From the IMG/VR virus record IMGVR_UViG_3300013233_000235, positions 140,042 through 204,041 of that record: a stretch of 64,000 nucleotides of DNA, one strand, 5' to 3'. Positions 9,726 through 63,179 of this stretch are shown here, one piece after another (within the stretch, counting starts at the first letter, position 1; each line of letters begins with the position of its first letter). The notes beneath the pieces were generated by a model that was not told the DNA's origin, searched no databases, and saw nothing but the letters and a program-made list of their open reading frames with translations. Position numbers and translations under genes: made by a program.

Positions 9726-9834
9726 AAGTCAGCCCCTTCGGGGGCTTTCTTTTTTATTTGTTTCCATACATTTTCAGAACCATATAACTACTATGAAGAG
9801 GCATCTTGATCTCTTACATTGGAGTTTAGTTATG
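9726..9834 (+). promoter_or_regulatory. Family-A cassette repeat copy 1 (terminator + early promoter + hairpin + SD)
   Basis: GCCCC-TTCG-GGGGC-TTTCTTTTTT ... CATATAAC-TACT-ATG-AAGAGG-CATCTTGA-TCTCTT ... GGAGTTTAGTT-ATG. Confidence 0.9.
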
Positions 9835-10440
9835 AATGACTTATTAATGCGCTTAGTTGTCACCAGTGGTGTTAAGCTGAGATGTGACCACCGGGTGGTT
9901 GCGGTATCGCCCGATCGAGCCTGTACGTGGGCGGCGATACTAACCATTGGGGCTGAACACCCCATCCTCCCAACCATGGGTGGTTGGGATAATGTCCACG
10001 CCGTCCCACTAGCCACACCCGGTCGGGGGGTGCTAAACGACAACGATGCCACCCGACGGTTTACCCAGGCGATCGTAGATGGGGTCGGGCGTGGGCACGG
10101 GCTTCTATCAGACCGTACACGTGCCATACAGGGCCTCAACATGGGTGTGAGACTGCCGGAGTTGTTTGAGGGATACATGTGGTCAAAACTGGCCACAAGA
10201 CATGGGCTGGGTAACAGCCGGGCACTTTTTTACGCTGCATACGGGCTGTGCGAGCGGCAGGGCGACTGGTGGGAGGTACTGACCCACATGGAAGAGTACC
10301 AGCGTAGCGCACGCCAGCTTGTTGGGTTGGCTGGTGTGCGTACAGGGGGGGATCACGGGCTACTGTATATGAACAGTCGCCCGGAGTTACGAGATGCTGC
10401 ATTGGACACACTCATCGAGTATGTAAGGGGGGTGAAATGA
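9832..10440 (+). CDS. Hypothetical protein, 'CxW..P' family
   Basis: DRACTWAAILTIGAEHPIL; true start follows the repeat's SD. Confidence 0.75.
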   Translation: MNDLLMRLVVTSGVKLRCDHRVVAVSPDRACTWAAILTIGAEHPILPTMGGWDNVHAVPLATPGRGVLNDNDATRRFTQAIVDGVGRGHGLLSDRTRAIQGLNMGVRLPELFEGYMWSKLATRHGLGNSRALFYAAYGLCERQGDWWEVLTHMEEYQRSARQLVGLAGVRTGGDHGLLYMNSRPELRDAALDTLIEYVRGVK

Positions 10441-11366
10441 GTAGGGTGGTTAAAGAGCAGTTCGGCCCACTCCACGAGATGTTGCTCGCATCAATGTCAT
10501 CCCATGGGCGTAACCGGCTGGTAAGTATGACCGGCATGGGTGTGGACGGCACCTGGTGGGATAGGGTGCTCACAAAGGGCCGTCGCATCACACCAACGAA
10601 GTTGTGGTCCTACCTGGATAACGTCTACGATCCCGCAAAGGACCCCTTTACCCCCCGTGAACTTATTGATGCCGCTATTGAGTGGGACTGGGGGGTAGGG
10701 GTAACACCAACCAATGCTGCGGCCACGAGCCCCATCGTTAAGGAGTTCTGGTGGATCAGGGTTAACCACCACATCAGCACTACCCAGCTGTGTAGGTCCA
10801 TACACATGTGCTCAAGCCAAGTGTACAACATGGAGTCCGGCGACCGAGGGTGCTCATTAGAGCACAGCCTGCAACTGGCAGAGGCATTTATAAGCATCGG
10901 TGTAAGCAGAGAGTTGGTAGCCGCCGCCATTCTCAGATCTTTCTGCCCAGATCCTCGCCGTCATGCGCTGATGGGTACCGTGCTGAACATACTGGTTATG
11001 AGCCGGTGTACGTTAGCACCACTGCTGCTGATCATGGGTGGGCCTGATCTAACCAGAGCCCGCTTCCTGACTGGAGAGGGTGTTTCAATAACCACCATTG
11101 CGGCATGGACCCGGCATGCTACAAATAAGTATAGAGAGTTACGATCTATACTGGAGACGGGGGCCGTTGGTAACAGGCAGGTATTGTGGGAGGCACTTAT
11201 GATGAGGGATGTGCCCCAAGGTGGATTGGCAAAACACCTCGGTACAAACCCACGCCTATTTAAATACATGCTAGCCATAGGCCGAGGGGTTGGGGAATTG
11301 GATCTCACTCCGATCCAAAATATGCCATTGCGGGACGATGTTATAACGGGGGTTTACGTATGCTAA
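10437..11366 (+). CDS. XRE-type HTH-containing protein
   Basis: RVNHHISTTQLCRSIHMCSSQVYNMESGDRGCSLEHSLQLAEAF; second degenerate HTH near the C-terminus. Confidence 0.7.
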   Translation: MSRVVKEQFGPLHEMLLASMSSHGRNRLVSMTGMGVDGTWWDRVLTKGRRITPTKLWSYLDNVYDPAKDPFTPRELIDAAIEWDWGVGVTPTNAAATSPIVKEFWWIRVNHHISTTQLCRSIHMCSSQVYNMESGDRGCSLEHSLQLAEAFISIGVSRELVAAAILRSFCPDPRRHALMGTVLNILVMSRCTLAPLLLIMGGPDLTRARFLTGEGVSITTIAAWTRHATNKYRELRSILETGAVGNRQVLWEALMMRDVPQGGLAKHLGTNPRLFKYMLAIGRGVGELDLTPIQNMPLRDDVITGVYVC

Positions 11367-11749
11367 ATACGCTGGTTAAGCAGGGGCCGTTCACGGTCCC
11401 TACCGGTCTATCGGATAGAGCGCTACTGAGGGTAATATCGGCCAATATACCCCACATCCCCACCATGCACCGTGACCCCGCCGCAGTGGTGGTGGCATTG
11501 GCCATGGTGTGGGGAAGCATGTGCACAGAAGATCGACGAGATCTGTATGCCAACTACAGGACTGGATTGGACATTTACTTATGTCCAGACGAATACGCTG
11601 TCAAAATAAATGGGTTGAAATCACCCATAGTCGCAGCCGAATGCGGTATGTGGGTCAGATCACTACCAGCGGATGTCCGCAAACGGCTTACCCACATGGT
11701 GAGTAAAGCCATATCGAAATACCGGGCGGATACCCCGCCACCAACATAG
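11360..11749 (+). CDS. Hypothetical protein
   Basis: Overlapping ORF in the operon; SD GGGGG. Confidence 0.65.
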   Translation: MLNTLVKQGPFTVPTGLSDRALLRVISANIPHIPTMHRDPAAVVVALAMVWGSMCTEDRRDLYANYRTGLDIYLCPDEYAVKINGLKSPIVAAECGMWVRSLPADVRKRLTHMVSKAISKYRADTPPPT

Positions 11750-11778
11750 GGTGCACATTGCGTCCCGAGGAGCTAGTA

Positions 11779-12543
11779 ATGATTAAAACTGTAGAAGAAC
11801 TGAATGAAGTATTGCCCGAGGGCTACCTCGCCGAGATTGGTGAGGGTAGTGGGGATGACACACACCACCAGCTTACCGTGATGAGAGGGGATGCACTGAT
11901 CATTAAGTATCTGTACAATGCCAACAGGTTCCCTAACATCTGGGTAGATGGGGACTACCTCGCCATTGTACAAAGCATAGACCGTAGCTGCATCCGGTTC
12001 TATCGGTTGGACATGGTGGGACAGGGGATGCTCTACAGCCTCATCTTCACCGGGTATGTGTTCGAGGTACCCGTGAGTATGTTAGAGGATGTGGTGGCCA
12101 CTCTACGGGCTTTAGAACTGGCTATAACTGCATACACCCCTGGCTTGGTGGACGTCGAGTACGCATCTTTGGCGCCGGGGGCATCCGCGATGTTTAAACA
12201 CATGGCTGTATCAAGGGGGTTCATACAGAAGAACCGTGGGGCAAGGTTGCACAGCGATTACTACATCCGTGACCCCGAGAATGGTGTGTCGCTGTATGAG
12301 AACACACTTTACCGGGAGGGCCGATGGTTTGGAGAAGGGGAGTACACAACGTTCGACGTGCGTATGGATGCTACCCGCTGGTCTATCTCTAACAGGATTC
12401 GCACAGGCACTGGTAAGAGTATCAGTCAGTGCATCAACGTGTATCGCCCAGAGCTGGCGCCTGGCCAGGCAGCCATGGTGTCGCTCATAAACGAATCACA
12501 CATGGTGGAGTTATTAGCTAACTCCACTGTTGTGGTTGCATAG
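11779..12543 (+). CDS. Hypothetical protein
   Basis: SD GAGGAG before ATG 11779. Confidence 0.7.
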   Translation: MIKTVEELNEVLPEGYLAEIGEGSGDDTHHQLTVMRGDALIIKYLYNANRFPNIWVDGDYLAIVQSIDRSCIRFYRLDMVGQGMLYSLIFTGYVFEVPVSMLEDVVATLRALELAITAYTPGLVDVEYASLAPGASAMFKHMAVSRGFIQKNRGARLHSDYYIRDPENGVSLYENTLYREGRWFGEGEYTTFDVRMDATRWSISNRIRTGTGKSISQCINVYRPELAPGQAAMVSLINESHMVELLANSTVVVA

Positions 12544-12592
12544 TGGGCACGGGGCTTTCTTAACCGTAAGCCCCATAGCTGTGTATGTGATG

Positions 12593-12695
12593 GCCCCCTC
12601 GGGGGCTTTCTTTTTTATTTGTTTCCATACATTTTCAGAACTATATAACTTGTATGAAGAGACATCTTGATCTCTTGTATAGGAGTTTAGTTATG
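12593..12695 (+). promoter_or_regulatory. Family-A cassette repeat copy 2
   Basis: Same architecture; loop CATCTTGA. Confidence 0.9.
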
Positions 12696-13430: not shown

Positions 13431-13440
13431 GGAGTTAGAC

Positions 13441-13845: not shown

Positions 13846-13846
13846 T

Positions 13847-13957
13847 AAGTCAGCCCCTTCGGGGGCTTTCCTTTTTATTTGTTTCCATCAATTCTTAGAA
13901 CTATATAACTTGTATGAAGAGACACTTTGATCTCTTATTGTGAAGGATGTTGATATG
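13847..13957 (+). promoter_or_regulatory. Family-A cassette repeat copy 3 (divergent 3' end)
   Basis: Terminator, TATATAAC and CACTTTGA-loop hairpin are conserved; SD is AAGGA. Confidence 0.9.
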
Positions 13958-14047
13958 AGTAAAGTATGTAAGAACCCCACAGGCCCAAATGGCCGGGTTA
14001 GTTACGGACTCGCCCACGGTACCACCCTCTCCAACGAGCCACACTAG
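13955..14047 (+). CDS. 30-aa peptide, first ORF of the cassette
   Basis: MSKVCKNPTGPNGRVSYGLAHGTTLSNEPH; SD AAGGA; starts ATGAGTAAAG like other cassette genes. Confidence 0.5.
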   Translation: MSKVCKNPTGPNGRVSYGLAHGTTLSNEPH

Positions 14048-14060
14048 GGATAAAGGCGCA

Positions 14061-14690
14061 ATGACCAACCATAGGGTTAGCCCCAACTACACACCCCCAG
14101 CAACCCCGCTAGGCGATTATCTGCGTGCCGTCATGGCGCACCAGGATATAACCTGGAGGGGACTTTCCAATCGCGTGGGATGTACACCCATCTCATTGGC
14201 CGCCATCGCATCAGGTGAATCCCGCTTTCCGGATGTATCCCAAGAAAACCTTCTGATGTATTGTAAACACGTTTACAAAGATAGGTTTTGTAAGGATGCT
14301 TGGCGCAGAGCTATGTCCGGCATACCAACGGGTAATAAGGAGGTGCACGCAGCAATGGCCACCCCTTTGGGGGACGCTATGCGGGAGTTCCGCCGAGAGC
14401 ATGGGATCACCTATAGCCAGTTCGCCCGCATGTGTGGTATCAATCACACGTACCTGCGGTCAATCGAGCGTGGTAAAGTGAAACTTAGCTTTGCCAACGG
14501 CGTTTATATATCAAAAGGTATACGCGCCAATGGGGACCTAGATGTGGCAGCGACACGCCTACTTGATTTGGTGTCTAGCACCATGGTGCAACCCACTTAC
14601 ACGGATATGGCTATTAGAATATCCGCCCTTAATGAAACCAAACAACGCAGGCTTTCTGACCTGCTACTTAAGTTGGAGACAGAGAAATGA
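14061..14690 (+). CDS. Tandem XRE-type HTH protein
   Basis: Two TPLGD-led HTHs, e.g. FRREHGITYSQFARMCGINHTYLRSIERG. Confidence 0.8.
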   Translation: MTNHRVSPNYTPPATPLGDYLRAVMAHQDITWRGLSNRVGCTPISLAAIASGESRFPDVSQENLLMYCKHVYKDRFCKDAWRRAMSGIPTGNKEVHAAMATPLGDAMREFRREHGITYSQFARMCGINHTYLRSIERGKVKLSFANGVYISKGIRANGDLDVAATRLLDLVSSTMVQPTYTDMAIRISALNETKQRRLSDLLLKLETEK

Positions 14691-15700: not shown

Positions 15701-15811
15701 AAGACTCCCTTAATCGGGAGTCTTTCTTTTTTATTTGTTTCCATACATTCTTAAGACTATATAACTTGTATGAAGAGACGCATTGATCTCTTGTATAGGA
15801 GTTTAGTTATG
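15701..15811 (+). promoter_or_regulatory. Family-A cassette repeat copy 4 (different terminator hairpin)
   Basis: AAGACTCCC-TTAATC-GGGAGTCTT, then the conserved core; loop CGCATTGA. Confidence 0.9.
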
Positions 15812-16351: not shown

Positions 16352-16967
16352 GTCCATATTAATGGTCTGCGACCCCAAGATCTTTGCTGTGCAGGATCGG
16401 TATCTGGTAACCAGACCTGACAGACCCTGTACGTGGAGAACACTGCATCGGCTGGCCCGCACTTACCCAATCGTTGACAGATACCTAAGTGTTGGGTGCC
16501 TGCTGCCAAATCCTGCCCCACACCGCCGTAGCAAGTTCATAGACGAAGGCACCGCCGAACTGTACGGCATTATCGCAGACTATGTGGCCAGTGGGTACGC
16601 CCACTATAAGTTCGGAGTAGAGGTCGCCAAACACCTGCGCGCCACCACATGTGTGCAGAGCATGAGTGGTACGCTGAACTGGCTGGCTATCTTACCACAC
16701 GTCTATCCGGAGTTACGCCCACTTGTGTTAAAGATACATGGCTTGGATGGGTTAGATAGCGTTATGGTTGCTAAGGCCGTGCGGTTAGCTATAAGCATAT
16801 CTAAGTACAGGCACCGCCGGACCACCTATTCCGAGGTATACGGAATAACGCCAGCAAACGAACGACAGTTGTTCAGCAGAGGATACACCTGCAAACATAA
16901 AGAAAAGATTATATCTAACCTAAAAGAGGGGGGCGAGTTATGGGATACATCATCGGTTCTATGGTAA
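16344..16967 (+). CDS. Hypothetical protein, 'CxW..P' family, HTH-like C-terminus
   Basis: DRPCTWRTLHRLARTYPIV; GTG start with SD GGAGG. Confidence 0.75.
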   Translation: MNKSILMVCDPKIFAVQDRYLVTRPDRPCTWRTLHRLARTYPIVDRYLSVGCLLPNPAPHRRSKFIDEGTAELYGIIADYVASGYAHYKFGVEVAKHLRATTCVQSMSGTLNWLAILPHVYPELRPLVLKIHGLDGLDSVMVAKAVRLAISISKYRHRRTTYSEVYGITPANERQLFSRGYTCKHKEKIISNLKEGGELWDTSSVLW

Positions 16968-17680
16968 AGAGGCTACGGGAAGTACAAGGGCTATCTGTAA
17001 AGGGCATGGCCCTCTTATACGGGGTTGGTCACCAAAGTCTCCGTAATGCCGAACACGGGGTTTACTCGCTAACCCCGGATGCTTTCCAAAGTATCGCAAT
17101 GGCTAGCGAGGAAGTGTATGCTAAAGCGGGGTTTACAAGGGCAGAGATGGCCACTGCCGCTGCTGACATGTACCTGGCTAGACACCGTGAAGTCATGAAA
17201 GACTTCTCATCGAAGAAGGTTGGGCCACGTAAAGAGTATAAGGTGCTGTTACGTAACGCTCGCCTGAATGGACACATATCGTCAACGCTGCTAGCCCAAG
17301 AAATGGGCATAACCCCATACAACTTCGGTCAGTTGGAATGCGCGGGGAGATCTGTTAAGGGCCCCATGTTACACCGATGGTTATTAGCACTTGAACAATA
17401 CCAGTGTGAGCGGCCCGTGCTTATAGAGATAGTGGCTGCCAGATATGGGATCTCTATAAGTATAGCTGGGGAGGTGTTCAACCAGATATACAGTGCTATC
17501 CTGGCCAGCGGTATCACCACCCAACGGTACCTTAAAGAAACGGGTACCCGGTCAACTACGCTACAGGTGCTGAATGTGCACCGCAGGGTGATGTGGAACA
17601 TGTGCATGGCCCACAATCGGTGGGTGGACGATAATGGTTTATTAGGCGATAGTTGTAAAATAAATATGGAGGAGCTATAA
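16940..17680 (+). CDS. Tandem XRE-type HTH protein
   Basis: VKRLREVQGLSVKGMALLYGVGHQSLRNAEHG and ARLNGHISSTLLAQEMGITPYNFGQLECAG. Confidence 0.8.
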   Translation: MGYIIGSMVKRLREVQGLSVKGMALLYGVGHQSLRNAEHGVYSLTPDAFQSIAMASEEVYAKAGFTRAEMATAAADMYLARHREVMKDFSSKKVGPRKEYKVLLRNARLNGHISSTLLAQEMGITPYNFGQLECAGRSVKGPMLHRWLLALEQYQCERPVLIEIVAARYGISISIAGEVFNQIYSAILASGITTQRYLKETGTRSTTLQVLNVHRRVMWNMCMAHNRWVDDNGLLGDSCKINMEEL

Positions 17681-19711: not shown

Positions 19712-19818
19712 AAGTTAGCCCTTCGGGGCTTTCTTTTTTATTTGTTTCCCTATATTCTTAGAACTATATAACTTGTATGAAGAGACACTTTGATCTCTTG
19801 TATAGGAGTTTAGTTATG
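19712..19818 (+). promoter_or_regulatory. Family-A cassette repeat copy 5
   Basis: Conserved architecture; loop CACTTTGA, 3' block GTATAGGAG. Confidence 0.9.
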
Positions 19819-21446: not shown

Positions 21447-21552
21447 AGTTAGCCCTTCGGGGCTTTCTTTTTTATTTGCTTCCCTATATTCTTAAGCCTA
21501 TATAACTTGTATGAAGAGACGCATTGATCTCTTGTATAGGAGTTTAGTTATG
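21447..21552 (+). promoter_or_regulatory. Family-A cassette repeat copy 6
   Basis: Conserved architecture; loop CGCATTGA, 3' block GTATAGGAG. Confidence 0.9.
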
Positions 21553-23492: not shown

Positions 23493-23603
23493 AAGTCAGC
23501 CCCGATTAAGGGGCTTTCTTTTTTATTTGTTTCGCCCATATGTCAGAACTATATAACTACTATGAAGAGACACTTTGATCTCTTACTTTGGAGTTTAGTT
23601 ATG
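23493..23603 (+). promoter_or_regulatory. Family-A cassette repeat copy 7
   Basis: Terminator loop GATTAA; loop CACTTTGA, 3' block ACTTTGGAG. Confidence 0.9.
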
Positions 23604-24284: not shown

Positions 24285-24293
24285 CAGCATAAG

Positions 24294-24324
24294 TAGACCC
24301 CCTATTAAGGGGTCTATTCTTTTT
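24294..24324 (+). terminator. Intrinsic terminator
   Basis: TAGACCCC/GGGGTCTA stem followed by TTCTTTTT. Confidence 0.8.
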
Positions 24325-24329
24325 ATGTA

Positions 24330-24435
24330 AATCTGGAATCAACGTATTTTCAATGACATATAACTAAAATGGATATAGGCGTTTTGACTTATATCTATTA
24401 ATGGCTTAACAGCCAGGAGTTTTACTATGACAAAT
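24330..24435 (+). promoter_or_regulatory. Family-B cassette repeat copy 1
   Basis: AATCTGGAATCAA..TCAATGACATATAAC-TAAA-ATG-GATATAGG-CGTTTTGA-CTTATATC..TGGCT-TAAC-AGCCA-GGAG..ATGACAAAT; near-identical to 58211-58314. Confidence 0.9.
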
Positions 24436-24768: not shown

Positions 24769-24838
24769 AGTCAGCCCCTTCGGGGGCTTTCTTTTTTATT
24801 TGTTTCCATACATTTTCAGAACTATATAACTTGTATGA
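24768..24838 (+). promoter_or_regulatory. Family-A repeat copy 8, partial (terminator + promoter; hairpin/SD replaced)
   Basis: Matches other copies up to TATATAACTTGTATGA, then diverges abruptly. Confidence 0.88.
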
Positions 24839-24894
24839 TAGAATAACCACATCACCTATTGACCACTATACTCTGGGTAACAAAAGGATGCTGT

Positions 24895-25212
24895 ATGAAC
24901 ACTATACAAGTAGAAGGAAAGATGTACCCAGTGATCGATATGTCAACCCACCCCACAAATGGGCTCATGCTCGTGGCTTTCGCCAAAGGTGTGGCGGTGG
25001 TTAGACAGGACGCACTAGGTACCAATTATGTGGATGTGGTTATACCTTACCAGGTCCCTAACCCTAGGGACATCAGGGTCCATGTAAATGCGGCTTTATC
25101 AAATGGCTATTTTTCGGCCGACTTAACCTATACGCACGTGGGCACCCCATGTACGTTCAACCTAATAATCCCAGCAATGGGGGGAACAGATGATGAAACA
25201 CACATTCGGTAG
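24895..25212 (+). CDS. Hypothetical protein
   Basis: SD AAGGA before ATG 24895. Confidence 0.65.
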   Translation: MNTIQVEGKMYPVIDMSTHPTNGLMLVAFAKGVAVVRQDALGTNYVDVVIPYQVPNPRDIRVHVNAALSNGYFSADLTYTHVGTPCTFNLIIPAMGGTDDETHIR

Positions 25213-26026
25213 TAGATTAACAATGGGCAAAGTTGCCTTTAAGGATGACGATAACTACATCGCCATCGAGGAGGTAGTAGAAGATGGCGCTGCTAAATAC
25301 GTCATGCTGGCATACGCGGGCGGCCAACAGCGGTACCAGATGGTTCGTATGCCGACATCACCAGAGCGGTGGCGTGGGGCTGCGGTATACATGCGAGGGG
25401 GTGCATATGTGGCACACATCTCCAGACACCTGGTTACCGGGGAACACGGTATCCTGATACGACTGTTCCTGGCCACGGGTGGTTATGTGGGCCAGTGTTA
25501 CCAGCAGGATAGTGGTAACACCAGCGCAATAGGCCATAAGGCGTTGGACCACGCCGTCGAGTCCATCATCGCTGGGTCGGCCCCGGTGTTACTGGCCGGG
25601 CATGATGCTTATCCGATGGATCTTAATGAAGGTATGGATTATATTGAGGCCGACAACCCGGGTGTTGACACAGTGCAGGTGGCCGGCGATGGTAGCCTGG
25701 ATATCAGTGCCTACCACGGCGACGTGTTATTCACCGTAGAGCGCACGGGCGACGATGGTAATCTGGTGAGACACAGTGTCCGTAAACACAGCCGTACAGA
25801 TGGGGCGATTAGTGACAATGGTGATTATCTGGTGCTGGTGCAGCGCAAGCTTGTAAAGACATCATTTATCACCCGACTGCTCACTTACAAGACAACACAG
25901 AATGGGTTAATGCCTATCTCCACAGCAACTGTGGGTAAGCACGGGGGGTATTTCTCAAAGGCCGAGTTGTCAGTGCGCCTAGGTAAATTTGTAGATGCCT
26001 CCATGGCATACGTTAACTACAATTAA
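25190..26026 (+). CDS. Hypothetical protein
   Basis: SD GGGGG; ends at a terminator. Confidence 0.7.
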   Translation: MMKHTFGSRLTMGKVAFKDDDNYIAIEEVVEDGAAKYVMLAYAGGQQRYQMVRMPTSPERWRGAAVYMRGGAYVAHISRHLVTGEHGILIRLFLATGGYVGQCYQQDSGNTSAIGHKALDHAVESIIAGSAPVLLAGHDAYPMDLNEGMDYIEADNPGVDTVQVAGDGSLDISAYHGDVLFTVERTGDDGNLVRHSVRKHSRTDGAISDNGDYLVLVQRKLVKTSFITRLLTYKTTQNGLMPISTATVGKHGGYFSKAELSVRLGKFVDASMAYVNYN

Positions 26027-26055
26027 AAAATGGCCCGTTTGGGCCCTTTTTTTTT
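26025..26055 (+). terminator. Intrinsic (possibly bidirectional) terminator
   Basis: A6-T-GGCCC-GTTT-GGGCC-C-T9. Confidence 0.85.
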
Positions 26056-30929: not shown

Positions 30930-30969
30930 ATAACACCCAGAGCCACATCGGCTCTGGGTGTTATTTATG
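30925..30969. terminator. Perfect 20-bp inverted repeat between convergent genes
   Basis: CATAAATAACACCCAGAGCC-ACATC-GGCTCTGGGTGTTATTTATG. Confidence 0.85.
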
Positions 30970-34937: not shown

Positions 34938-34942
34938 TATGA

Positions 34943-36598: not shown

Positions 36599-36610
36599 AT
36601 GTTACCCCTA

Positions 36611-37306: not shown

Positions 37307-37315
37307 GTCTTATAC

Positions 37316-51687: not shown

Positions 51688-53277
51688 TTATTTGTAGATT
51701 TCTTTAATTTCCTCTAATGAGGTTTCTAGGGCAGTTTTCATAACCCACTCCCTACCCATGAGCATGTGTTTTTCGGTTATCATGCTTACCACCTCTAGAT
51801 GCTTGGTAAGCTTTGCGAAGAAACTGCTTAGTGTGCGTAAGAGTGCGGTGCGTGCATCCATTGTCCACTGCACAACCGCGATGATTGGCGAGCCAATGGG
51901 GTTGGAATCACCCTTGCGCGATTTCTCTAACCCCTCCATGGTTTTCTCAAGATGTTTTACTATCTTCTCAATCGTGTTGGCGGCCTTTTCTATACGCTTA
52001 TCCATTGAGGCGTAATACGCGATTGCAACCTTGGGGGGTATGGGAAGGTAATCAATTTTGTCGACCTCAATCGCAGCAGCCTCAACACCCGTTTGTGGGG
52101 TTGCGGTAAGGGATTCCTCATCTACACTCAGCCCTATACGCATTGTCCCAGGTAGTGAGTCGTAGTAATACTCTGTTACACCAGGGGTGTTAACAGCGTG
52201 TTCCTTTTTAAACAGTTCTAGTAGTTGTGTATCCACCACCTCCTCACGCCAGCTCACGAGGTCAGCAAACATCTGATTAGCAGCATCCTCATGCCTTGCT
52301 TCCTGATCGGGCGACAACTGTTTGTGGGTTGGTGAGCCTTTCTTAATCCTGCCTGGAATCTTATTGGCGGCCTTATCCTCGATAAATAGTTTAAACCCTT
52401 CCATTGCAGAATCGCCCAGTTTTTCAGCGGACTCGGTTATTTTCACAACGGCATCTAGTAGGGCACCATGATCGGCCAGGGTGTCCTCGAATCCTTGGAA
52501 GTTACCAATCTTACCATGGTCCTCAAGCGTTAGCACCCTACCCATATCCTTAAACAGACCCTTGTGCTTATTCCGGTAATCGACATCCAGTGGGAAGAAT
52601 GTAGCTGACGCAATGATCTTGGCCTTTTCGCTATCTTCGCCATAAGCTTTTATGACTTCCAATTCCATCGCAGCGTGTTTATCCTCGGCATGCTTCAGTG
52701 CGTCGGTTAGCTTCTTTAGCTCGGCTTTGGCTTTGGCTTCCTCGGCTTTACTGGCGTTCTTAACAGCTTCTTCAGCGGCTTTAATGCGCTCTTCCGTTGG
52801 GATGACGGCTGTTAGATCGCCGATGTTATCTTGCACATTAGCTATGTTAGCATTAGCGCGGTCACGCCGGTTAGACCGTTCCCCGGTTTTACCGCCGCTT
52901 GGTGTCTTAGACTTCTCGTATGCACCACCTGAAGCACCAGACTTACCAGACGAACTACCGCCGAACATGAACGTTAATGCTCTGGCGATCCACTTTAGAA
53001 TGCGCCCGATCAGGCTGACAATAGCCCCCCATACGCCTTTAATCATAGAGCCGATACCCTGGCACCCGGCGTGGTATTCACTACTCTTTTTAAGCACCAC
53101 ATCGATGGCAGCATCGTATTGCTCAGGCCCAACATCAATGTCTTCGAATGTCATCGCCTCATCTAGCAGTGCCTGTAGGCCCGCTGCTGATTCCTGCTGG
53201 GCATTGGCTGTTTCGATTTCCAGTTCGTCGGCATAGTCCACCAGCGTGCGTCGGTGTAAGTCTTCAATGTATCCCAT
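51688..53277 (-). CDS. Internal head protein, phiKZ-like paralog family
   Basis: Acidic propeptide followed by GIGSMIKGVWGAIVSLIGRILKWI amphipathic helix. Confidence 0.65.
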   Translation of the reverse strand: MGYIEDLHRRTLVDYADELEIETANAQQESAAGLQALLDEAMTFEDIDVGPEQYDAAIDVVLKKSSEYHAGCQGIGSMIKGVWGAIVSLIGRILKWIARALTFMFGGSSSGKSGASGGAYEKSKTPSGGKTGERSNRRDRANANIANVQDNIGDLTAVIPTEERIKAAEEAVKNASKAEEAKAKAELKKLTDALKHAEDKHAAMELEVIKAYGEDSEKAKIIASATFFPLDVDYRNKHKGLFKDMGRVLTLEDHGKIGNFQGFEDTLADHGALLDAVVKITESAEKLGDSAMEGFKLFIEDKAANKIPGRIKKGSPTHKQLSPDQEARHEDAANQMFADLVSWREEVVDTQLLELFKKEHAVNTPGVTEYYYDSLPGTMRIGLSVDEESLTATPQTGVEAAAIEVDKIDYLPIPPKVAIAYYASMDKRIEKAANTIEKIVKHLEKTMEGLEKSRKGDSNPIGSPIIAVVQWTMDARTALLRTLSSFFAKLTKHLEVVSMITEKHMLMGREWVMKTALETSLEEIKEIYK

Positions 53278-54193: not shown

Positions 54194-55609
54194 ATGTTTG
54201 ACAATATACCATCCGCATTACCGTTAATACCATACCCCAACGTGGGCTGTCTTATGGATATACCCACCGCCTACTCCGTACTTGGTTCTAAGGGTGAGTC
54301 TATATTGGTAGGTGGGCAAGTGCCCATCTTCTCCGTCGCAGGCCCTGGGAACGTAGGTAAGTCCGAGTTAACTAATTACCGTGTTTGTACGGTAATTGGT
54401 AGATACAAGAATAGCTTCGGCATGGTCTATGATACGGAGGTGTCTGCGCAATACAGTCGTTATGTGCGCGCACTGAGTAGATTCCCCGAGTTTGACGGTA
54501 TGGATCTAACTATAGACAATCCCCGGTTTAAGTTAGTTGTATCCGGTGACATGTTAGGGGATGCGTGGTTCGAGGGTATACGCACGGTTCTTACCAAATC
54601 CCGTATGTCCGCTAATCGTAAGACCGAGGCGACACCATTTCTGCGTACAGATGGGTCTATCCTAAAGTGGCCCGCACCATGGGTTTTCGATATTGACTCC
54701 CTGTCTATGTTCAAGGGGGCCGCCCAGACAAAGCAGTTAGACGATAACACTATCGGATCATCTGAACAGAACACCGTATTCATGGGCGATGGCAAGACCA
54801 AGACCTTACTCATGACGATCTTGCCAAACCTTGCCCATAAGAGTTCGACCTCCTGGCTGGCGGTTGCACACGTGGGCACCACCATCAAGATGGAGAAATA
54901 CGCACCCGATGCGCCCAAGCTGACGTTTGCAAAATCGGGTATTAAGAAGAAAGGTGTTCCGCCCATCTTCGACAGCATCAACGGTATGTTGATCGAGATA
55001 GCTGGCACCACGGTGTGTACTAACTCCAGCAGTGATAAGTCGGCCAGGTTCCCTCTACGCGAAGAAGATCGTAGTAAGAAGGGTACGGCTATCGATCTAA
55101 ACGTAATGCGTGGTGTGACCACCCGTAACAAGTACGGCAACAGCGGCCAGACTTGGAACTTCGTAACATCCCAGCGTGATGGTCTTAATGTTGAGCTTAC
55201 AGAGTTCCTGTACGTCAAGGATGCTGAGGGGTATGATGTTGGATTTGGCCTTAGCGGATCTAATACTAACTACGTGCTCGATCTAGCACCGGATACCAAG
55301 TTACAGCGCACCAACGTGCGCATCAAATTACAGACTACACCGATGTTGCGTAGGGCATTAACCATTACGGCCGACCTGTTGCAGATCAAGCTATTGTGGG
55401 GTCCTGAGAAAATCGATCCGGACCTATTATGTGACCCAGCGACACTCTACGCCGATCTTAAGGCTATGGGGTATAACTGGGATGAGTTACTTGACACCCG
55501 TGAGTACTGGCTATATGACCAGTACTCAAAGAAGGAAAAGCCATTCCTCTCTACCATAGATCTTCTGCGGATGCGCAAAGGGTTGTACAAACCATATTGG
55601 ATGAAATAA
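54194..55609 (+). CDS. uvsX: UvsX/RecA-like recombinase
   Basis: NVGCLMDIPT, Walker A AGPGNVGKS, YDTE, Walker B DIDSLS, RNKYG; C-terminal YKPYW. Confidence 0.88.
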   Translation: MFDNIPSALPLIPYPNVGCLMDIPTAYSVLGSKGESILVGGQVPIFSVAGPGNVGKSELTNYRVCTVIGRYKNSFGMVYDTEVSAQYSRYVRALSRFPEFDGMDLTIDNPRFKLVVSGDMLGDAWFEGIRTVLTKSRMSANRKTEATPFLRTDGSILKWPAPWVFDIDSLSMFKGAAQTKQLDDNTIGSSEQNTVFMGDGKTKTLLMTILPNLAHKSSTSWLAVAHVGTTIKMEKYAPDAPKLTFAKSGIKKKGVPPIFDSINGMLIEIAGTTVCTNSSSDKSARFPLREEDRSKKGTAIDLNVMRGVTTRNKYGNSGQTWNFVTSQRDGLNVELTEFLYVKDAEGYDVGFGLSGSNTNYVLDLAPDTKLQRTNVRIKLQTTPMLRRALTITADLLQIKLLWGPEKIDPDLLCDPATLYADLKAMGYNWDELLDTREYWLYDQYSKKEKPFLSTIDLLRMRKGLYKPYWMK

Positions 55610-57764: not shown

Positions 57765-57767
57765 CAT

Positions 57768-58210: not shown

Positions 58211-58314
58211 AATCTGGAATCAAGCATATCTCAATGACATATAACTAAAATGGATATAGGCGTTTTGACTTATATCACTATGGCTTAACAGCCAGGAGTT
58301 TTACTATGACAAAT
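58211..58314 (+). promoter_or_regulatory. Family-B cassette repeat copy 2
   Basis: Near-identical to 24330-24435, including ATGACAAAT. Confidence 0.9.
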
Positions 58315-58611: not shown

Positions 58612-58719
58612 AGTCAGCCCCTTCGGGGGCTTTCTTTTTTATTTGTTTCCCTATATTCTTAAGCCTATATAACTTGTATGAAGAGACGCATTGATCTCTT
58701 ACTTTGGAGTTTAGTTATG
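58611..58719 (+). promoter_or_regulatory. Family-A cassette repeat copy 9
   Basis: Loop CGCATTGA, 3' block ACTTTGGAG. Confidence 0.9.
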
Positions 58720-60207
58720 AGTAAGTATCCAGATGTGCGCAAGGCCGAAGTGGTGTCCAAACTGCTAAGTCATGCTTGTTCCAGCTATTACGCTGGCACC
58801 CCTATTCTATCGGATTATGAGTATGACATGATTCGAAACGACGAGGGCGATTGGCTACGTACAACCGGTGCGGTTGCCGTAATGTACACCTCTATCCCCA
58901 TCCGCACCAAGGTTGACAATCTGGGGTGGTCATATGTGCCGCAACCGGTGGAGTGGTGCCCAGAGCCCGATATGATTAATCGCAACTACCGGTGGTGCGC
59001 TTTGTATGCGCACATACCCATACCTGTGGGTAAGATTGTCATAGCGAGATGGGTGGGTGGCAAGTTGGTGGACATCATCACCCCGCCCATTAACGGCTGG
59101 GTTACCGACCTATCACACCTCATCGGTAAATGCGACCTACCCATGGATGTTACAAAATCCTGGGGTGATGCGGATCTACACGTGTTGGGCACGCTGGCAC
59201 CGAGCGACGCCGTTACGTATAAGTTCCGTCGCATACCAGTGCACATCGGGGACCCCCTATCCGACGTCCCCGAAGTCACCCGGGCCATTGCTGCCACCAT
59301 CGGCTTTGATACGATCCAGACCACGATAATAGATGTGGATGATCGTAAAGATTGGGCGTTATCTGAGGGAGATTTGCTGTATGCCACGCAGCCCGTACCA
59401 TTCGAGGGTAATGGTTTTTTACCGGGGCTGGTGCGTGTGGCGGGGTATTCCGCCACACACTGGGGTAACGCCAAGGTCGTAGACGGTAGTGCGGTGTCAC
59501 AGGTTAATAGTCTGATAAACACACGGGGGCAGTTTATCAAGCCCGTTACCCAAGTTCAGGTGGTGTGCCCGGCATGTGGCGGTGAGGTAAGAAGCGTAGA
59601 CCTAGTCAGCGAGTTTGTCTCGGATGTCACCATAGATGGTGGCATCCTACATCAGTGTTTGCGGGCTGAAAGTGACAGCGAGTGCTGCCCTGGCCAGTTG
59701 GCCGCTGCCATCATGGCGTTACCATTTGCGTATCGCCCTGAGCATCGGGATGAAAATATCCACGGCGTCATATTACGTGGTGACCACAATACTGTGGCGG
59801 GGTATTCTGATGGGGACTTGACGGTGGATTACAATAGTTGGCGACATCTGTTGCAATCACCGCCGCCAAATTTGGTTGCCACTCACCGGGATTTCTGGGC
59901 GTGCTTGGAGCAGATGGTTAAAGAGGGTTTATCTAAGCGGGCCTACGCAGACGCCATGGTCAAAATGTATACCGGTGTAACATTCACACCCCTGGCCGAC
60001 ATGGACATACGCCGCATTGGTTCAGCTACACCCAAGCTGCTAGTGGCTGCGTTTGAAAAGGATCCACTCTTGGCTGAGTTTATGGATGTCAGTGAGGACA
60101 CGTTGTCCGTCGGGGAAGACTACAAAGGCACTGTTGGCATAGACCTCACCACAGCTAGTGGTATACAGGAGTTTCACGCATACGCCATTAAGAACCTATT
60201 GAGTTAA
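58717..60207 (+). CDS. Catalytically dead NAD-ligase-derived protein 1
   Basis: YYAGTPILSDYEYD (Ia); IARWVGGKLV; HVLGT; IGFDT; CPACGG..QC..CCPG; no KxDG. Confidence 0.8.
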   Translation: MSKYPDVRKAEVVSKLLSHACSSYYAGTPILSDYEYDMIRNDEGDWLRTTGAVAVMYTSIPIRTKVDNLGWSYVPQPVEWCPEPDMINRNYRWCALYAHIPIPVGKIVIARWVGGKLVDIITPPINGWVTDLSHLIGKCDLPMDVTKSWGDADLHVLGTLAPSDAVTYKFRRIPVHIGDPLSDVPEVTRAIAATIGFDTIQTTIIDVDDRKDWALSEGDLLYATQPVPFEGNGFLPGLVRVAGYSATHWGNAKVVDGSAVSQVNSLINTRGQFIKPVTQVQVVCPACGGEVRSVDLVSEFVSDVTIDGGILHQCLRAESDSECCPGQLAAAIMALPFAYRPEHRDENIHGVILRGDHNTVAGYSDGDLTVDYNSWRHLLQSPPPNLVATHRDFWACLEQMVKEGLSKRAYADAMVKMYTGVTFTPLADMDIRRIGSATPKLLVAAFEKDPLLAEFMDVSEDTLSVGEDYKGTVGIDLTTASGIQEFHAYAIKNLLS

Positions 60208-60273
60208 ACGCGGCGTGTGTTGCTACACCGCATCCCCATCCTGGGGGTGTGTACTACATAAAGGGTATATTAC

Positions 60274-60726: not shown

Positions 60727-60728
60727 TT

Positions 60729-60837
60729 AGTTAGCCCTTCGGGGCTTTCTTTTTTATTTGTTTCGCGCATGTATCAGAACTATATAACTTGTATGAAGAG
60801 ACACTTTGATCTCTTATAGCGAAAGGGTTTAATTATG
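60729..60837 (+). promoter_or_regulatory. Family-A cassette repeat copy 10
   Basis: Loop CACTTTGA; divergent SD AAGGG. Confidence 0.9.
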
Positions 60838-62151
60838 AATGATTCAAATAGTAGCATGTATACCGACGCCTTCATCCGCCGGTCTTTAAAGAAAGCCCAC
60901 CTTGCGCACAGCCATGGTGAGACATCTGAGATGGCCGATGATCAGTATGACCAACTGATGTTTGTGTTGCACCAACGGGTCGGATCATTCCAACCGCTGC
61001 GACAGGCTTACCCAACACACGCCCCTGTAGAGGGTACGCCCGTCGAGCGCATAAAACGGGTGATGGGTATGTACCGGTTCACACTACCGGATGATACCCG
61101 GGTATATGCCCACTGGGGTGAGCAGATTATCGCAGCTGTTTACACGGGGGGTGTGTTAACTGCGGTGGGGGCTGAATCCAAGTGGTCCCAGGACCCCGGT
61201 GAGCTGGCAGAGGTTGGCATCCCCCCGGCTATCCCCCACATCGGCGATGCCGTTGTATACGGGTGGTCCAATAAAGTCACCGGCCGCTTCGAAGCCGTTT
61301 GTTTAAAGGCTGCCCAGTCACCCAGTCTGGAAGCGTTAGGATTCGACACCCCTCCCGCAGTGAATCCATTACTGGTATCATTACCAGCCATCAGTGTGGT
61401 CGGCGACAGGTTCCACACAACCTCCTACCATATAAACGATATCCTGGATTTTCCACCCACGATGGTATTCCCAGATGGTACCCCGGTCGATGCCCATAAC
61501 ACCGAGCTTGATTTCGACGGAACCTTCAAGTCAGATTCCCCGGATACCCACTCATGCCCAGCATGTGGTGGGGATGTTACTAAGCTTGATGGTAATGGTG
61601 TATACCAGTGCATCGTGGCAGCGGCCGGTTTACCGGGTGAGTGCCCCGGTCCGATGACGGCCATGATGAGTCTCGGTTCAGAGCTAGCCAAACTTTGCAG
61701 ATATACCCCAGACATGCCGGTGGGTTATACATTTGGGGATATGGCTCTGGAGTTTGATTTACCATTGATGGCGCTACAAGACTGGTTGCAGCGCATGCTG
61801 TTGATACACGGTACGGAGGATAACCACATCCCATACCGCACATATGCGGAAACTATGGCGGCCATCGCTGACAAAGATATGGTTAGCCGTATCGAGATGT
61901 ATCTGGGTGATATCCGGGTTATAGACATCTCTCCGGATAAGGTTATCCGGTTATCCAGCACCCTCACGCGGGGGGTTCAGCGCCTTGTTAACAACGCACT
62001 GCTGTCGTCAACTGCGTATGACCTGCTAATCCCACATGGGGATGCTGGTCCCGCAAATCTCGATGTGGATGATTTGCGGGACCATCCCGTCATTCTAGCG
62101 TTGCTGGAAGAGGCGCAAGATGCTGAAGCACGCCGCGCTGTTAATCTATAA
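60835..62151 (+). CDS. Catalytically dead NAD-ligase-derived protein 2
   Basis: MADDQYDQL; TRVYAHWGEQIIAAVYTGG; LGFDTP; CPACGG..YQC..ECPG. Confidence 0.8.
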   Translation: MNDSNSSMYTDAFIRRSLKKAHLAHSHGETSEMADDQYDQLMFVLHQRVGSFQPLRQAYPTHAPVEGTPVERIKRVMGMYRFTLPDDTRVYAHWGEQIIAAVYTGGVLTAVGAESKWSQDPGELAEVGIPPAIPHIGDAVVYGWSNKVTGRFEAVCLKAAQSPSLEALGFDTPPAVNPLLVSLPAISVVGDRFHTTSYHINDILDFPPTMVFPDGTPVDAHNTELDFDGTFKSDSPDTHSCPACGGDVTKLDGNGVYQCIVAAAGLPGECPGPMTAMMSLGSELAKLCRYTPDMPVGYTFGDMALEFDLPLMALQDWLQRMLLIHGTEDNHIPYRTYAETMAAIADKDMVSRIEMYLGDIRVIDISPDKVIRLSSTLTRGVQRLVNNALLSSTAYDLLIPHGDAGPANLDVDDLRDHPVILALLEEAQDAEARRAVNL

Positions 62152-62156
62152 GTAAC

Positions 62157-62265
62157 AAGTCAGCCCCTTCGGGGGCTTTCTTTTTTATTTGTTTCCATAC
62201 ATTCTCAAGACTATATAACTTGTATGAAGAGACACTTTGATCTCTTATAGTGGAGTTTAGTTATG
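62157..62265 (+). promoter_or_regulatory. Family-A cassette repeat copy 11
   Basis: Loop CACTTTGA, 3' block ATAGTGGAG. Confidence 0.9.
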
Positions 62266-63030
62266 AGTAAAGATACAGTGTGCAGTCTTACAGGTGATCC
62301 TGCTGACTCGCTGGTTACTTCCGATACCCCGCCTAGCCACTTTGCATCCCGCGATAGGCTGCGTAATTTTGTGTCTGTGCTGTGTGCCACGGGTGTTGTA
62401 AGGTTAAATGTTGGGGCTCTTTATTACCATGCGGATATTCCGTCCGACTTCGTCGAGCTGCTAATGCCGCACACCAGGGCTGGTGGCAAAGTTAAGGTAA
62501 AGCCTGATTTGGTAAATATGTCAACCGATATACGCATGTTAAGGCGCGATTCGGGGTCATCGTCACATGGAGTCATGGTGGCACCCATATCGACCACTGG
62601 TGCAGAGTTGCACGTGGCCGTATGCATGGAGGATGATGCAGGGTCTATTACAACCGAATTGTCTGTCAAAGGGTCCACCCTACTAGAGATAGCCTTTGAT
62701 GTAACATTTGGGGTAGGCCACCTATGGTTGATTACGGATGCTGGGGCGTGGCTGTACAGATGTGGGACCGACAGCGGTGGTAAGTTGCGAGCACCCGTTC
62801 CTTCCGAGCCGCGTGGGGGTGGTGGCCCATTGGGTGGCCGGGTGGTTAACATGGTCTATAGTGCGGATGTGAATACTGCGGGTGTGTTGGTATATTCTGC
62901 GGCCAATATCGGCATCGGGGTACAGGGAAAGACTTATGAGGTGACCATGTCTCCGGAAGGTGATGGCCAGGTCGGCGCCGGCGTGACCATGGGTGAAATG
63001 CTGGCTAATATATCGGGCAGCGAGGGGTGA
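62263..63030 (+). CDS. Hypothetical protein, paralog of 12693-13430
   Basis: RLRNFV, LWLITDAGAWL, GGPLGG..MVYSADV, YEVTMSP. Confidence 0.8.
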   Translation: MSKDTVCSLTGDPADSLVTSDTPPSHFASRDRLRNFVSVLCATGVVRLNVGALYYHADIPSDFVELLMPHTRAGGKVKVKPDLVNMSTDIRMLRRDSGSSSHGVMVAPISTTGAELHVAVCMEDDAGSITTELSVKGSTLLEIAFDVTFGVGHLWLITDAGAWLYRCGTDSGGKLRAPVPSEPRGGGGPLGGRVVNMVYSADVNTAGVLVYSAANIGIGVQGKTYEVTMSPEGDGQVGAGVTMGEMLANISGSEG

Positions 63031-63071
63031 TGCGTCCGCACTTTGCGGTTTAAGGTGCACCCCCTCCTATA

Positions 63072-63179
63072 AAGTTAGCCCCTTCGGGGCTTTCTTTTTT
63101 ATTTGCTTCCATACATTCTTAGAACTATATAACTACTATGAAGAGACACTTTGATCTCTTATATAGGAGTTTAGTTATG
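63072..63179 (+). promoter_or_regulatory. Family-A cassette repeat copy 12
   Basis: Loop CACTTTGA, 3' block ATATAGGAG. Confidence 0.9.

What the first reader, a model, noticed from the sequence alone, without database searches (positions are those of the whole stretch)
9726..63179. Plug-in early-expression cassette system: 14 dispersed terminator-promoter-hairpin-RBS repeats punctuate the accessory genome
Seen: 12 family-A copies (9726, 12593, 13847, 15701, 19712, 21447, 23493, 24768 partial, 58611, 60729, 62157, 63072) and 2 family-B copies (24330, 58211), all on the + strand and absent from the 26-58 kb core block. A family-A copy joins the terminator of the previous cassette to YATATAAC-N4-ATG, a hairpin, and GGAGTTTAGTT-ATG. 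Identity often extends into the cargo start (ATGAGTAA in six genes). Established: phiKZ early (virion RNAP) promoters use a similar AT-rich TATATTAC motif, and promoter/stem-loop repeats (PeSL) shuffle modules in T4-type phages. Inference: these repeats act both as early promoters and as homology arms for gaining, losing and duplicating gene modules, giving an integron-like array without an integrase.
Basis: partly seen in the sequence, partly recalled or inferred. Interest (0 to 1): 0.85.

Follow-up and report, generated by a model that had tools for sequence, protein, structure and literature searches.

The report
Early promoter-terminator units of a jumbo phage
The 14 repeats are real and are most likely the standard boundary between early transcription units of a very divergent, uncultivated phiKZ-like giant phage; this is a known design, and the idea that the repeats also shuffle genes has only indirect support.

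Summary
The window holds 12 family-A and 2 family-B copies, all on the + strand, all between + strand genes, far beyond chance. The window is the last 64 kb of a 204-kb IMG/VR contig with phiKZ-type genes (terminase, sheath, PhuZ tubulin, an RNA polymerase beta-like subunit) at about 25-36% identity. The contig holds at least 20 A and 5 B copies, all in one orientation.

Each unit is an intrinsic terminator, then a promoter, a 37-56 nt leader and a Shine-Dalgarno site. The promoter aligns without gaps to phiKZ early (virion RNA polymerase) promoters: upstream element WWTCMA at -34..-29, core ATAT(A/T)AC at -13..-7, and a G six bases downstream. Most leaders begin with a small hairpin at +2.

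The recombination idea is partly supported. The copies are mosaics (PHI test p=0.0002-0.0008), identity runs 9-17 nt into unrelated gene starts, and a 47%-identical relative carries a 2.4-kb array of such units where this phage has none. "Integron-like" is not supported. The closest analogues are phiKZ early promoters and the PeSL cassettes of T4-like phages. No close relative exists, so cassette turnover could not be tested directly.

The parts
9731..9834 (+). Family-A unit 1: terminator, promoter (core 9782-9788, predicted +1 at 9795), +2 hairpin, SD 9821, start codon 9832
12592..12695 (+). Family-A unit 2 (core 12643-12649, predicted +1 at 12656, start codon 12693)
13852..13957 (+). Family-A unit 3 with variant SD region (core 13903-13909, predicted +1 at 13916, start codon 13955 of a 30-aa ORF)
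15701..15811 (+). Family-A unit 4. Its terminator stem has a different sequence (AAGACTCCC/GGGAGTCTT) but the same structure (core 15759-15765, predicted +1 at 15772, start codon 15809)
19717..19818 (+). Family-A unit 5 (core 19766-19772, predicted +1 at 19779, start codon 19816)
21451..21552 (+). Family-A unit 6, upstream of the NAD-dependent DNA ligase (core 21500-21506, predicted +1 at 21513, start codon 21550)
23498..23603 (+). Family-A unit 7 (core 23551-23557, predicted +1 at 23564, start codon 23601)
24292..24429 (+). Family-B unit 1: its own terminator (24292-24318), upstream element TGGAATCAA, core 24358-24364, predicted +1 at 24371, hairpin GATATAGG-N8-CTTATATC, second hairpin GGCT-TAAC-AGCC, SD, start codon 24427
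24773..24897 (+). Family-A unit 8, the 'partial' copy: terminator and promoter intact (core 24824-24830, predicted +1 at 24837), with an unrelated 58-nt leader that has no good hairpin. It heads the last early unit (genes 24895-26026)
26032..26054 (.). Bidirectional terminator (GGCCCGTTTGGGCC plus T9) that closes the early block. No promoter unit follows it
58211..58308 (+). Family-B unit 2 with no upstream terminator, next to a divergent - strand gene (core 58239-58245, predicted +1 at 58252, start codon 58306)
58616..58719 (+). Family-A unit 9 (core 58667-58673, predicted +1 at 58680, start codon 58717)
60733..60837 (+). Family-A unit 10 with variant SD region (core 60782-60788, predicted +1 at 60795, start codon 60835)
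62162..62265 (+). Family-A unit 11, the reference copy: terminator stem 62162-62177, T-run to about 62192, upstream element 62192-62197, core 62213-62219, predicted +1 at 62226, hairpin 62227-62246, SD 62252-62255, start codon 62263
63077..63179 (+). Family-A unit 12 (core 63127-63133, predicted +1 at 63140, start codon 63177). Identity to unit 11 runs 17 nt into an otherwise unrelated gene
9023..9047 (+). Possible relic of the 5' edge of a unit (AATAGCAGTATAAAG plus a weak GC hairpin), with no T-run and no promoter
   Evidence: (D7)

Best explanation
The repeats are the standard junction between early transcription units of a very divergent phiKZ-like (nucleus-forming, Chimalliviridae-type) jumbo phage. 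Each unit has four parts. First, a strong intrinsic terminator ends the upstream unit: a GC stem with a UUCG-type loop and the tail TTTCTTTTTTATTTG. Second, about 43 bp downstream lies a promoter for the phage's own injected virion RNA polymerase. Third, a 37-40 nt leader (54-58 nt in family B and copy 24776) usually begins at +2 with a small hairpin. This hairpin most likely acts in the RNA, as a 5'-end stabiliser or a protein-binding tag. Fourth, a strong Shine-Dalgarno site and start codon follow. The units head operons of 1-6 genes, mostly ORFans, all on one strand. Their unusual length and uniformity come from functional constraint plus gene conversion or recombination among copies. As a by-product they can serve as PeSL-like portable regulatory cassettes at which early operons are gained, lost or duplicated. 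What is shown: the repeats, their anatomy, the register match to phiKZ promoters, the phiKZ-type gene set, and the mosaicism. What is inferred: the start site, early timing, which polymerase is used, the hairpin's role, and any cassette mobility.
For: The copies are real and strictly oriented. The phage type is established by virion proteins, TerL (36%), sheath, PhuZ and an RNA polymerase beta-like subunit at E=1e-100. An ungapped alignment anchored on the predicted +1 places window A and B units, units from relatives L130 and L133, and five phiKZ TATATTAC promoters in one register. A-AT-AC is invariant at -13..-7, T(-1) and G(+1) are conserved, T(-32) is invariant, and WWTCMA sits at -34..-29. 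Published rules agree: the start site lies 6 nt after the conserved element in phiKZ, phiR1-37 and AR9 (PMC5312081); a roughly 10-nt AT-rich element is centred near -10 in every such phage (PMC7598289); and phiKZ 5'UTRs are mostly 31-40 nt (PMC8244752). phiKZ shows the same terminator-then-promoter layout, with repeats up to 64 nt reaching the SD and sequence-conserved terminators carrying TTAT (PMC10914365). Families A and B share only the promoter core, spacing and upstream element, while their leaders differ. Two A copies that lack a terminator keep homology exactly from the upstream element onward. No sigma-70-like site falls on any unit. For the hairpin, four leader classes in this contig plus classes in L130, L133 and L134 have different stems at +1..+5. 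Five of 10 classes meet a strict criterion, against 4-13% background. The only stem change in 20 A copies is A-U to G.U, and B also has a G.U pair, both compatible with a sense-strand RNA. For recombination, PHI gives p=0.0002-0.0008 on 18 full copies, and identity runs 9-17 nt into unrelated coding sequences. Cargo is ORFan apart from the ligase and HTH proteins.
Against: No transcript data exist, so the start site, timing and polymerase are by analogy only. The RNA polymerase subunit found cannot be assigned to the virion or the non-virion enzyme (one search shows no similarity to phiKZ gp55). The hairpin is weak (about -5 kcal/mol, z about -1). It shows no covariation within family A. It is missing from copy 24776, from a relative (L135) and from most phiKZ early leaders. 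An invariant stem with a variable centre would equally fit a DNA operator. PHI can be inflated by site-specific constraint in a short regulatory alignment.
Confidence: 0.75

Rival explanations
1. One reading: the repeats are primarily homology arms of a gene-capture system (an integron-like or PeSL-like array). Recombination between copies excises, inserts and duplicates cassettes, and promoter activity is secondary.
For: The copies are mosaic. The homologous unit extends about 20 nt upstream of the terminator and 9-17 nt into unrelated coding starts (D5/D7, 68). Cargo is almost all ORFan. Relative L130 has five units with small genes, three of them tandem paralogues at a 402-409 nt period, inserted exactly where the window has two adjacent genes. 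A UvsX-like recombinase is encoded at 54194-55609. PeSLs of about 100 bp do this in T4-type phages (PMC2839356, PMC4122927).
Against: No close relative exists, so no indel breakpoint could be placed in a repeat. The compared relatives are only 37-47% identical in a core protein, a distance at which gene content differs everywhere. Only two old paralogue pairs (28% and 40% aa identity) sit behind different units, so there is no recent cassette duplication in this genome. Many units head 2-6 gene operons. The integron features are absent: no promoterless cassettes, no attC, no attI, no single Pc. Functional constraint alone explains much of the conservation.
Confidence: 0.3
2. The units are host sigma-70 early promoters, as in T4 PeSLs, read by the bacterial RNA polymerase.
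For: TTGTTT-N17-TATATA can be read in family A, and T4-type PeSLs are sigma-70 promoters (PMC2839356).
Against: The consensus scan finds no sigma-70-like site on any unit. The position equivalent to -7 is A or C, not T. Family B has no matching -35 in that register. What A and B share is the phiKZ-type core plus 6N plus G. phiKZ-type phages transcribe independently of host polymerase (PMC7598289, PMC10914365), and this contig encodes such a polymerase subunit.
Confidence: 0.07
3. The inverted repeat at +2..+21 acts in DNA, as an operator for a phage repressor that shuts early promoters off, rather than as an RNA hairpin.
For: In 20 A copies the half-sites AAGAGA and TCTCTT are essentially invariant while the centre of the 8-bp spacer varies. 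Several HTH proteins are encoded in the early operons, at 13989-14690 and 16940-17680.
Against: Families A and B and the leaders in relatives have unrelated half-sites but keep an inverted repeat at the same place. That fits a structural role better than one specific repressor. The observed substitutions give G.U pairs on the sense strand, which would be A/C mismatches on the other strand. A and B share part of the loop sequence, C-R-Y-N-T-T-G-A.
Confidence: 0.15
4. The conserved stretch encodes a shared N-terminal peptide (MKRHFDLLYRSLVM...) beginning at the upstream ATG, or the repeat is a small mobile element.
For: The upstream ATG is in frame with the downstream start in 8 of 11 A copies, so the ORF lister starts there.
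Against: The frame is closed by a stop in copies 13855, 60734 and 62165. SD-region indels of 2-3 nt shift it, no ribosome-binding site precedes it, and a strong one precedes the second ATG. Against a mobile element: there are no terminal inverted repeats or target duplications, the copies are always intergenic, always in one orientation, and in register with the gene start.
Confidence: 0.02

Closest known systems
Early (virion RNA polymerase) promoters of phiKZ-like jumbo phages (phiKZ TATATTAC; AR9 AAATATATATTAT-(6N)-G; phiR1-37)
   Same: Both have an AT-rich core centred near -10, differing from phiKZ by one base, with a G start six bases downstream and an upstream TTCAA-like element in the same register. 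Both occur in dozens of copies on one strand ahead of early operons, have leaders of about 37 nt, and often sit just after a sequence-conserved terminator (PMC5312081, PMC7598289, PMC8244752, PMC10914365).
   Different: Here the conserved unit is about 134 nt at 64-86% identity and includes the terminator stem, the leader and the SD. In phiKZ the repeats are about 37 nt, or 64 nt in three copies. Most leaders here start with a hairpin at +2, which phiKZ early leaders mostly lack. Nothing here has been tested experimentally.
PeSL (promoter-early stem-loop) composite terminator/promoter cassettes of T4-like phages
   Same: Both are conserved composite units of about 100 bp that combine a stem-loop terminator, an early promoter and an SD. 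[quoted passage not shown] The PeSL authors themselves compared them to integrons (PMC2839356, PMC4122927).
   Different: The PeSL promoter matches the E. coli sigma-70 consensus, and this one does not. For PeSLs, recombination was shown by comparing 96%-identical phages and by sequencing mini-circles. Neither test is possible here. No paper in the searched library links PeSLs to jumbo or phiKZ-like phages.
Integron gene cassettes (intI, attI, attC, Pc)
   Same: Both are an array of mostly unknown accessory genes, all in one orientation, separated by a recurring structured repeat.
   Different: No integrase or att sites were found. Every unit has its own promoter, terminator and ribosome-binding site, and many units carry several genes. 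The repeat is a transcription signal, not a recombination site.
5'-terminal stem-loops that stabilise bacterial mRNAs (e.g. the ompA leader) and protein-binding leader hairpins (e.g. lambda nut boxB). This comparison is from my own knowledge and was not tested.
   Same: Both are small hairpins within the first few nucleotides of the transcript, with variable stems and a partly conserved loop.
   Different: This hairpin is only predicted and its energy is weak. No binding partner or effect on decay is known.

Membership tests
phiKZ-like virion-RNA-polymerase early promoter | Highly conserved AT-rich element of about 8-10 nt centred near -10 | tested here: met
   CTATATAAC or CATATAAC is present in all 14 units. 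It aligns column for column with phiKZ TATATTAC.
phiKZ-like virion-RNA-polymerase early promoter | Transcription starts 6 nt downstream of the element, usually at G | not testable with these tools
   A G lies exactly 6 nt downstream in every unit, but no RNA data exist for this uncultivated phage.
phiKZ-like virion-RNA-polymerase early promoter | The phage encodes multisubunit phiKZ-type RNA polymerases, one of them packaged in the virion | tested here: inconclusive
   One beta-like subunit was found (phrog_2962, E=1e-100, L010:6317-7693). It is unassigned between virion and non-virion enzymes. Only about 111 of the 204 kb of the contig were readable.
phiKZ-like virion-RNA-polymerase early promoter | Many copies, co-oriented, upstream of early non-structural operons and absent from structural blocks | tested here: met
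   All 20 of 20 exact copies in the contig are on the + strand. There are none in the window's structural block at 26-58 kb. A core-only copy precedes the PhuZ homologue.
phiKZ-like virion-RNA-polymerase early promoter | Early expression independent of host polymerase and of new protein synthesis | not testable with these tools
   This needs infection experiments.
PeSL composite cassette (T4-like phages) | Conserved unit of about 100 bp joining a stem-loop terminator to an early promoter and SD | tested here: met
PeSL composite cassette (T4-like phages) | The promoter is a strong sigma-70 consensus promoter | tested here: not met
   No sigma-70-like match falls on any unit. The shared core is of the phiKZ type.
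PeSL composite cassette (T4-like phages) | Indels and replacements between close relatives end within the units | not testable with these tools
   No relative closer than 47% aa identity was found in any collection. The distant relative L130 has an array of units and genes at a site that is empty here.
PeSL composite cassette (T4-like phages) | Recombination between units, giving chimeric units and mini-circles | tested here: inconclusive
   Mosaicism is significant (PHI p=0.0002-0.0008). Circles cannot be tested.
Integron | Promoterless cassettes with attC sites, integrated at attI by IntI and expressed from one Pc | tested here: not met
   Each unit has its own promoter, terminator and SD. 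Operons hold 1-6 genes. No integrase appeared among the proteins scanned, though not every ORF was scanned.

The most novel reading that the evidence does not exclude
These units may be the chimallivirus counterpart of T4 PeSLs. On this reading they are portable 'terminator, virion-polymerase promoter, leader' cassettes that the phage's own UvsX-type recombination machinery uses to move, duplicate and homogenise early ORFan operons. The +2 hairpin, whose loop is partly shared by families A and B but differs between phages, would be a phage-specific RNA tag read by a phage protein, for stabilisation, antitermination across the many terminators, early shut-off, or handling of mRNAs made inside the early infection compartment.
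Probability: 0.2. Interest if true: 0.7.

Novelty: new variant of a known kind. Interest (0 to 1): 0.4.

Why it matters
The units give a ready-made map of early transcription units (promoter, predicted start, leader, terminator) for a deep-branching, uncultivated lineage of phiKZ-like phages. The register match shows that the bipartite early-promoter architecture of phiKZ is conserved at about 25% protein identity. If the 5' hairpin and the recombination role hold up, they would extend the PeSL idea, in which regulatory cassettes double as recombination linkers, to phages that use their own polymerase. They would also point to a leader element specific to early mRNAs of this clade. As it stands, most of the finding is an expected feature of this phage family.

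Tried and rejected
- **Megablast:** 16 kb of the early region against 50,697 phage records gave no match.
- **Exact-pattern scan of IMG/VR:** only the source contig matched.
- **Metagenome scan:** one chance hit inside a coding region.
- **Ligase as a probe for relatives:** IMG/VR returned the same contig only, and among 5.8 billion proteins the next best hit was 30% identical.
- **UvsX-like protein as a probe:** it gave relatives at 37-47% identity. L130, L131 and L132 are identical to each other, so no microevolution is visible. L133 and L134 have no long repeats in the 21 kb fetched. In L135-L137 the promoter could not be recognised with confidence.
- **Rfam (gathering thresholds) and tRNA scan:** nothing found.
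- **Covariation within family A:** uninformative because the stems are invariant.
- **All-against-all comparison of cargo proteins:** only two old paralogue pairs sit behind different units, so recent cassette duplication in this genome is rejected.
- **tblastn of two large cargo proteins against phages:** no match.
- **Upstream ATG as a real start codon:** rejected.

Full report
**Observation.** A profile built from the 12 copies finds exactly those 12 in the window, with E from 1e-31 to 1e-43, all on the + strand. It finds nothing else except faint similarity to family B. A pattern covering the core, the 'ATG' and the loop end has 11 matches against 0.00 expected. The alignment shows four parts in order:
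- a GC-rich stem with a TTCG loop and the tail TTTCTTTTTTATTTG;
- a spacer, then CTATATAAC-N4-ATG;
- the inverted repeat AAGAGA-N8-TCTCTT;
- GGAGTTTAGTT-ATG.

Family B has the same order of parts with different sequence: CATATAAC-TAAA-ATG, GATATAGG-N8-CTTATATC, a second small hairpin, then AGGAG.

**Where the window comes from.** The window is the last 64 kb of IMG/VR contig IMGVR_UViG_3300013233_000235, which is 204,041 bp. Its virion proteins match phiKZ-type families, and tblastn places them at 22-30% identity to phiKZ-like phages of Pseudomonas, Erwinia, Vibrio, Xanthomonas and Ralstonia. Other readable parts of the contig encode homologues of phiKZ terminase (36%), tail sheath, gp26, gp27 and the PhuZ tubulin. 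They also encode a phiKZ-type RNA polymerase beta-like subunit at E=1e-100. The phage is therefore a deep-branching, uncultivated relative of the nucleus-forming jumbo phages. Across the contig there are at least 20 exact-pattern A copies, all on the + strand. There are at least 5 B copies, and single promoters with the same core but other leaders; one of these sits about 100 nt upstream of the PhuZ homologue.

**What the unit is.** The literature states that every RNA-polymerase-encoding jumbo phage has a conserved AT-rich element of about 10 nt centred near -10 of its early operons (PMC7598289). In phiKZ, phiR1-37 and AR9 the start site lies 6 nt downstream; the AR9 consensus is AAATATATATTAT-(6N)-G+1 (PMC5312081). 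I aligned 49-nt segments ending at that G from five window units, four units of relative L130, one of L133 and five phiKZ TATATTAC sites. The alignment is gap-free. A-AT-AC is invariant at -13..-7, T(-1) is nearly invariant and G(+1) invariant, and a further shared element WWTCMA lies at -34..-29 with T(-32) invariant. The upstream element was not used to anchor the alignment, so it is independent support.

Two A copies that lack a terminator keep homology exactly from that upstream element onward, which marks the promoter's upstream edge. The predicted leader is 37 nt (39-40 nt in SD variants, 54-58 nt in family B and copy 24776). phiKZ leaders are mostly 31-40 nt (PMC8244752). phiKZ itself has terminator hairpins directly followed by TATATTAC promoters, with repeats of 37-64 nt reaching the SD. 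Its terminators are conserved in sequence and carry a TTAT motif (PMC10914365), which is also present here.

A sigma-70 reading fails. The scan finds no such site on any unit, and families A and B share no -35 in a common register. The 'ATG' is not a start codon: its frame hits a stop in three copies, 2-3 nt indels shift it in others, and it has no ribosome-binding site. No Rfam family matches.

**The hairpin.** In family A it occupies +2..+21, with 6 bp and an 8-nt loop. In family B it occupies +2..+25, with 8 bp including a G.U pair and an 8-nt loop. The two loops share C-R-Y-N-T-T-G-A, while the stems are unrelated. Two further leaders in this contig and leaders in L130 (ATAACAC-GTCC-GTGTTAT), L133 (GGTATA-CACGT-TATACC) and probably L134 have different hairpins at +1..+5. 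Under a strict rule (at least 5 bp, starting at or before +4, energy of -4.5 kcal/mol or lower), 5 of 10 independent leader classes qualify. Random or shuffled sequence gives 4-13%.

The evidence has limits. The energy is weak, with z about -1. Within family A the stems never vary except for one A-U to G.U change, so there is no covariation inside the family. Copy 24776, relative L135 and most phiKZ early leaders lack a hairpin. I read it as a frequent feature of this clade that acts in RNA, either as a 5' stabiliser or as a protein-binding tag. A DNA operator for an early-encoded HTH repressor remains possible.

**Cargo.** The 14 units in the window head operons of 1-6 genes, about 30 genes in total. 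Apart from an NAD-dependent DNA ligase and HTH proteins, the proteins tested have no Pfam or PHROG function. The two large proteins tested have no tblastn match in known phages. The early block ends at a terminator at 26032-26054, and structural genes follow.

**Do the repeats recombine?** Four results point that way.
- In 18 full A copies, incompatible site pairs are fewer among neighbouring sites than among distant ones. PHI is 0.45-0.52 against 0.63 under permutation, p=0.0002-0.0008, in the gap-free core (first pass). Spacer type, N4 type, loop type and SD type occur in reticulate combinations.
- Homology extends beyond the functional parts. It runs about 20 nt upstream of the terminator across different stop codons (families D5 and D7). 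It also runs 9-17 nt into the coding starts of proteins that are otherwise unrelated, for example units 62165 and 63079.
- The repeats are 64-86% identical, whereas the only paralogues behind different units are 28% and 40% identical as proteins. The units are therefore maintained or homogenised independently of their cargo.
- In the closest relative found (L130, 47% identity in the UvsX-like protein, with syntenic core genes), a 2.4-kb array lies between two genes that are only 38 nt apart in the window. The array holds five units with small genes, three of them tandem 91-aa paralogues. L134 resembles the window at this site.

Against a strong claim: no relative closer than 47% exists in the phage records, IMG/VR, the JGI metagenomes or the 5.8-billion-protein set. 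No breakpoint can therefore be tied to a unit. PHI on a short, constrained alignment is suggestive, not proof.

**Comparison with known systems.** The promoter is a new member of the phiKZ-type early promoter class. The composite unit works like a PeSL of T4-like phages (PMC2839356, PMC4122927), but it fails the PeSL feature of a sigma-70 promoter. No paper in the library connects PeSLs with jumbo phages. It is not integron-like, because its cassettes are self-expressed, often hold several genes, and lack att sites.

**Verdict.** The repeats are a real and well-described feature. They are mostly what is expected for this phage family, with two additions worth testing: a 5' leader hairpin, and PeSL-like mosaicism in a phage that uses its own polymerase. 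Interest 0.4.

Noticed in passing
window 4113-4238: There are three tandem 42-nt repeats, two of them identical, near the C-terminus of the 813-aa virion structural protein (1806-4247). They encode a repeated acidic, proline-rich 14-aa unit (D6).
   Followed up: no
window 40951-43557 (- strand): This 868-aa ORF has no family match. It is built of many diverged 60-nt (20-aa) repeats (D2/D3) and lies next to a tail-fibre-like protein at 39573-40592. It is probably a fibre or decoration protein.
   Followed up: no
window 33219-39001 (- strand): Three consecutive proteins of 551-572 aa have multiple FG-GAP repeats (Pfam E from 1e-17 to 1e-54) and no PHROG match. This is an unusual paralogous set inside the virion and tail block.
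   Followed up: no
window 13955-14690: Behind unit 13855 the ribosome-binding site serves a 30-aa ORF (13955-14047). It overlaps, in another frame, the 233-aa HTH protein that starts at 13989. This could be a frameshift, an assembly error or translational coupling.
   Followed up: partly
window 58717-60207, 60835-62151, 63177-64000 and 21550-23481: Three ORFan cargo proteins share a weak N-terminal motif (..P.LSD.EYD..) with the start of the NAD-dependent ligase, resembling ligase domain Ia. The proteins at 60835 and 63177 are 40% identical paralogues.
   Followed up: partly
window 51688-53277 (- strand): A 529-aa gene sits between the RNase H-like gene and the gene upstream of the UvsX-like recombinase. 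It has no counterpart at the syntenic site in L130, L133 or L134, so it is a lineage-specific insertion that is not associated with an early unit.
   Followed up: partly
window 30925-30969: A perfect 20-bp inverted repeat lies between convergent genes at the end of the + strand baseplate block. It is a very strong bidirectional terminator candidate.
   Followed up: no
L130:2543-4830: The relative phage (Ga0117756_1000008) carries three tandem cassettes, each a 91-aa paralogue with its own terminator, promoter, hairpin and SD unit. They are followed by a 96-aa protein with a Cas_VVA1548 Pfam hit.
   Followed up: partly
L001:5245-5351 (contig 62741): The PhuZ tubulin homologue is preceded by the same core (ATATAAC-N6-G) but with a different leader hairpin (GGGT-AACA-ACCC).
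   Followed up: partly
window 9023-9047: A 25-nt match to the 5' edge of the unit (AATAGCAGTATAAAG plus a GC hairpin) has no T-run or promoter and lies between genes 8473-9027 and 9083-9718. It may be a scar of a lost unit.
   Followed up: partly
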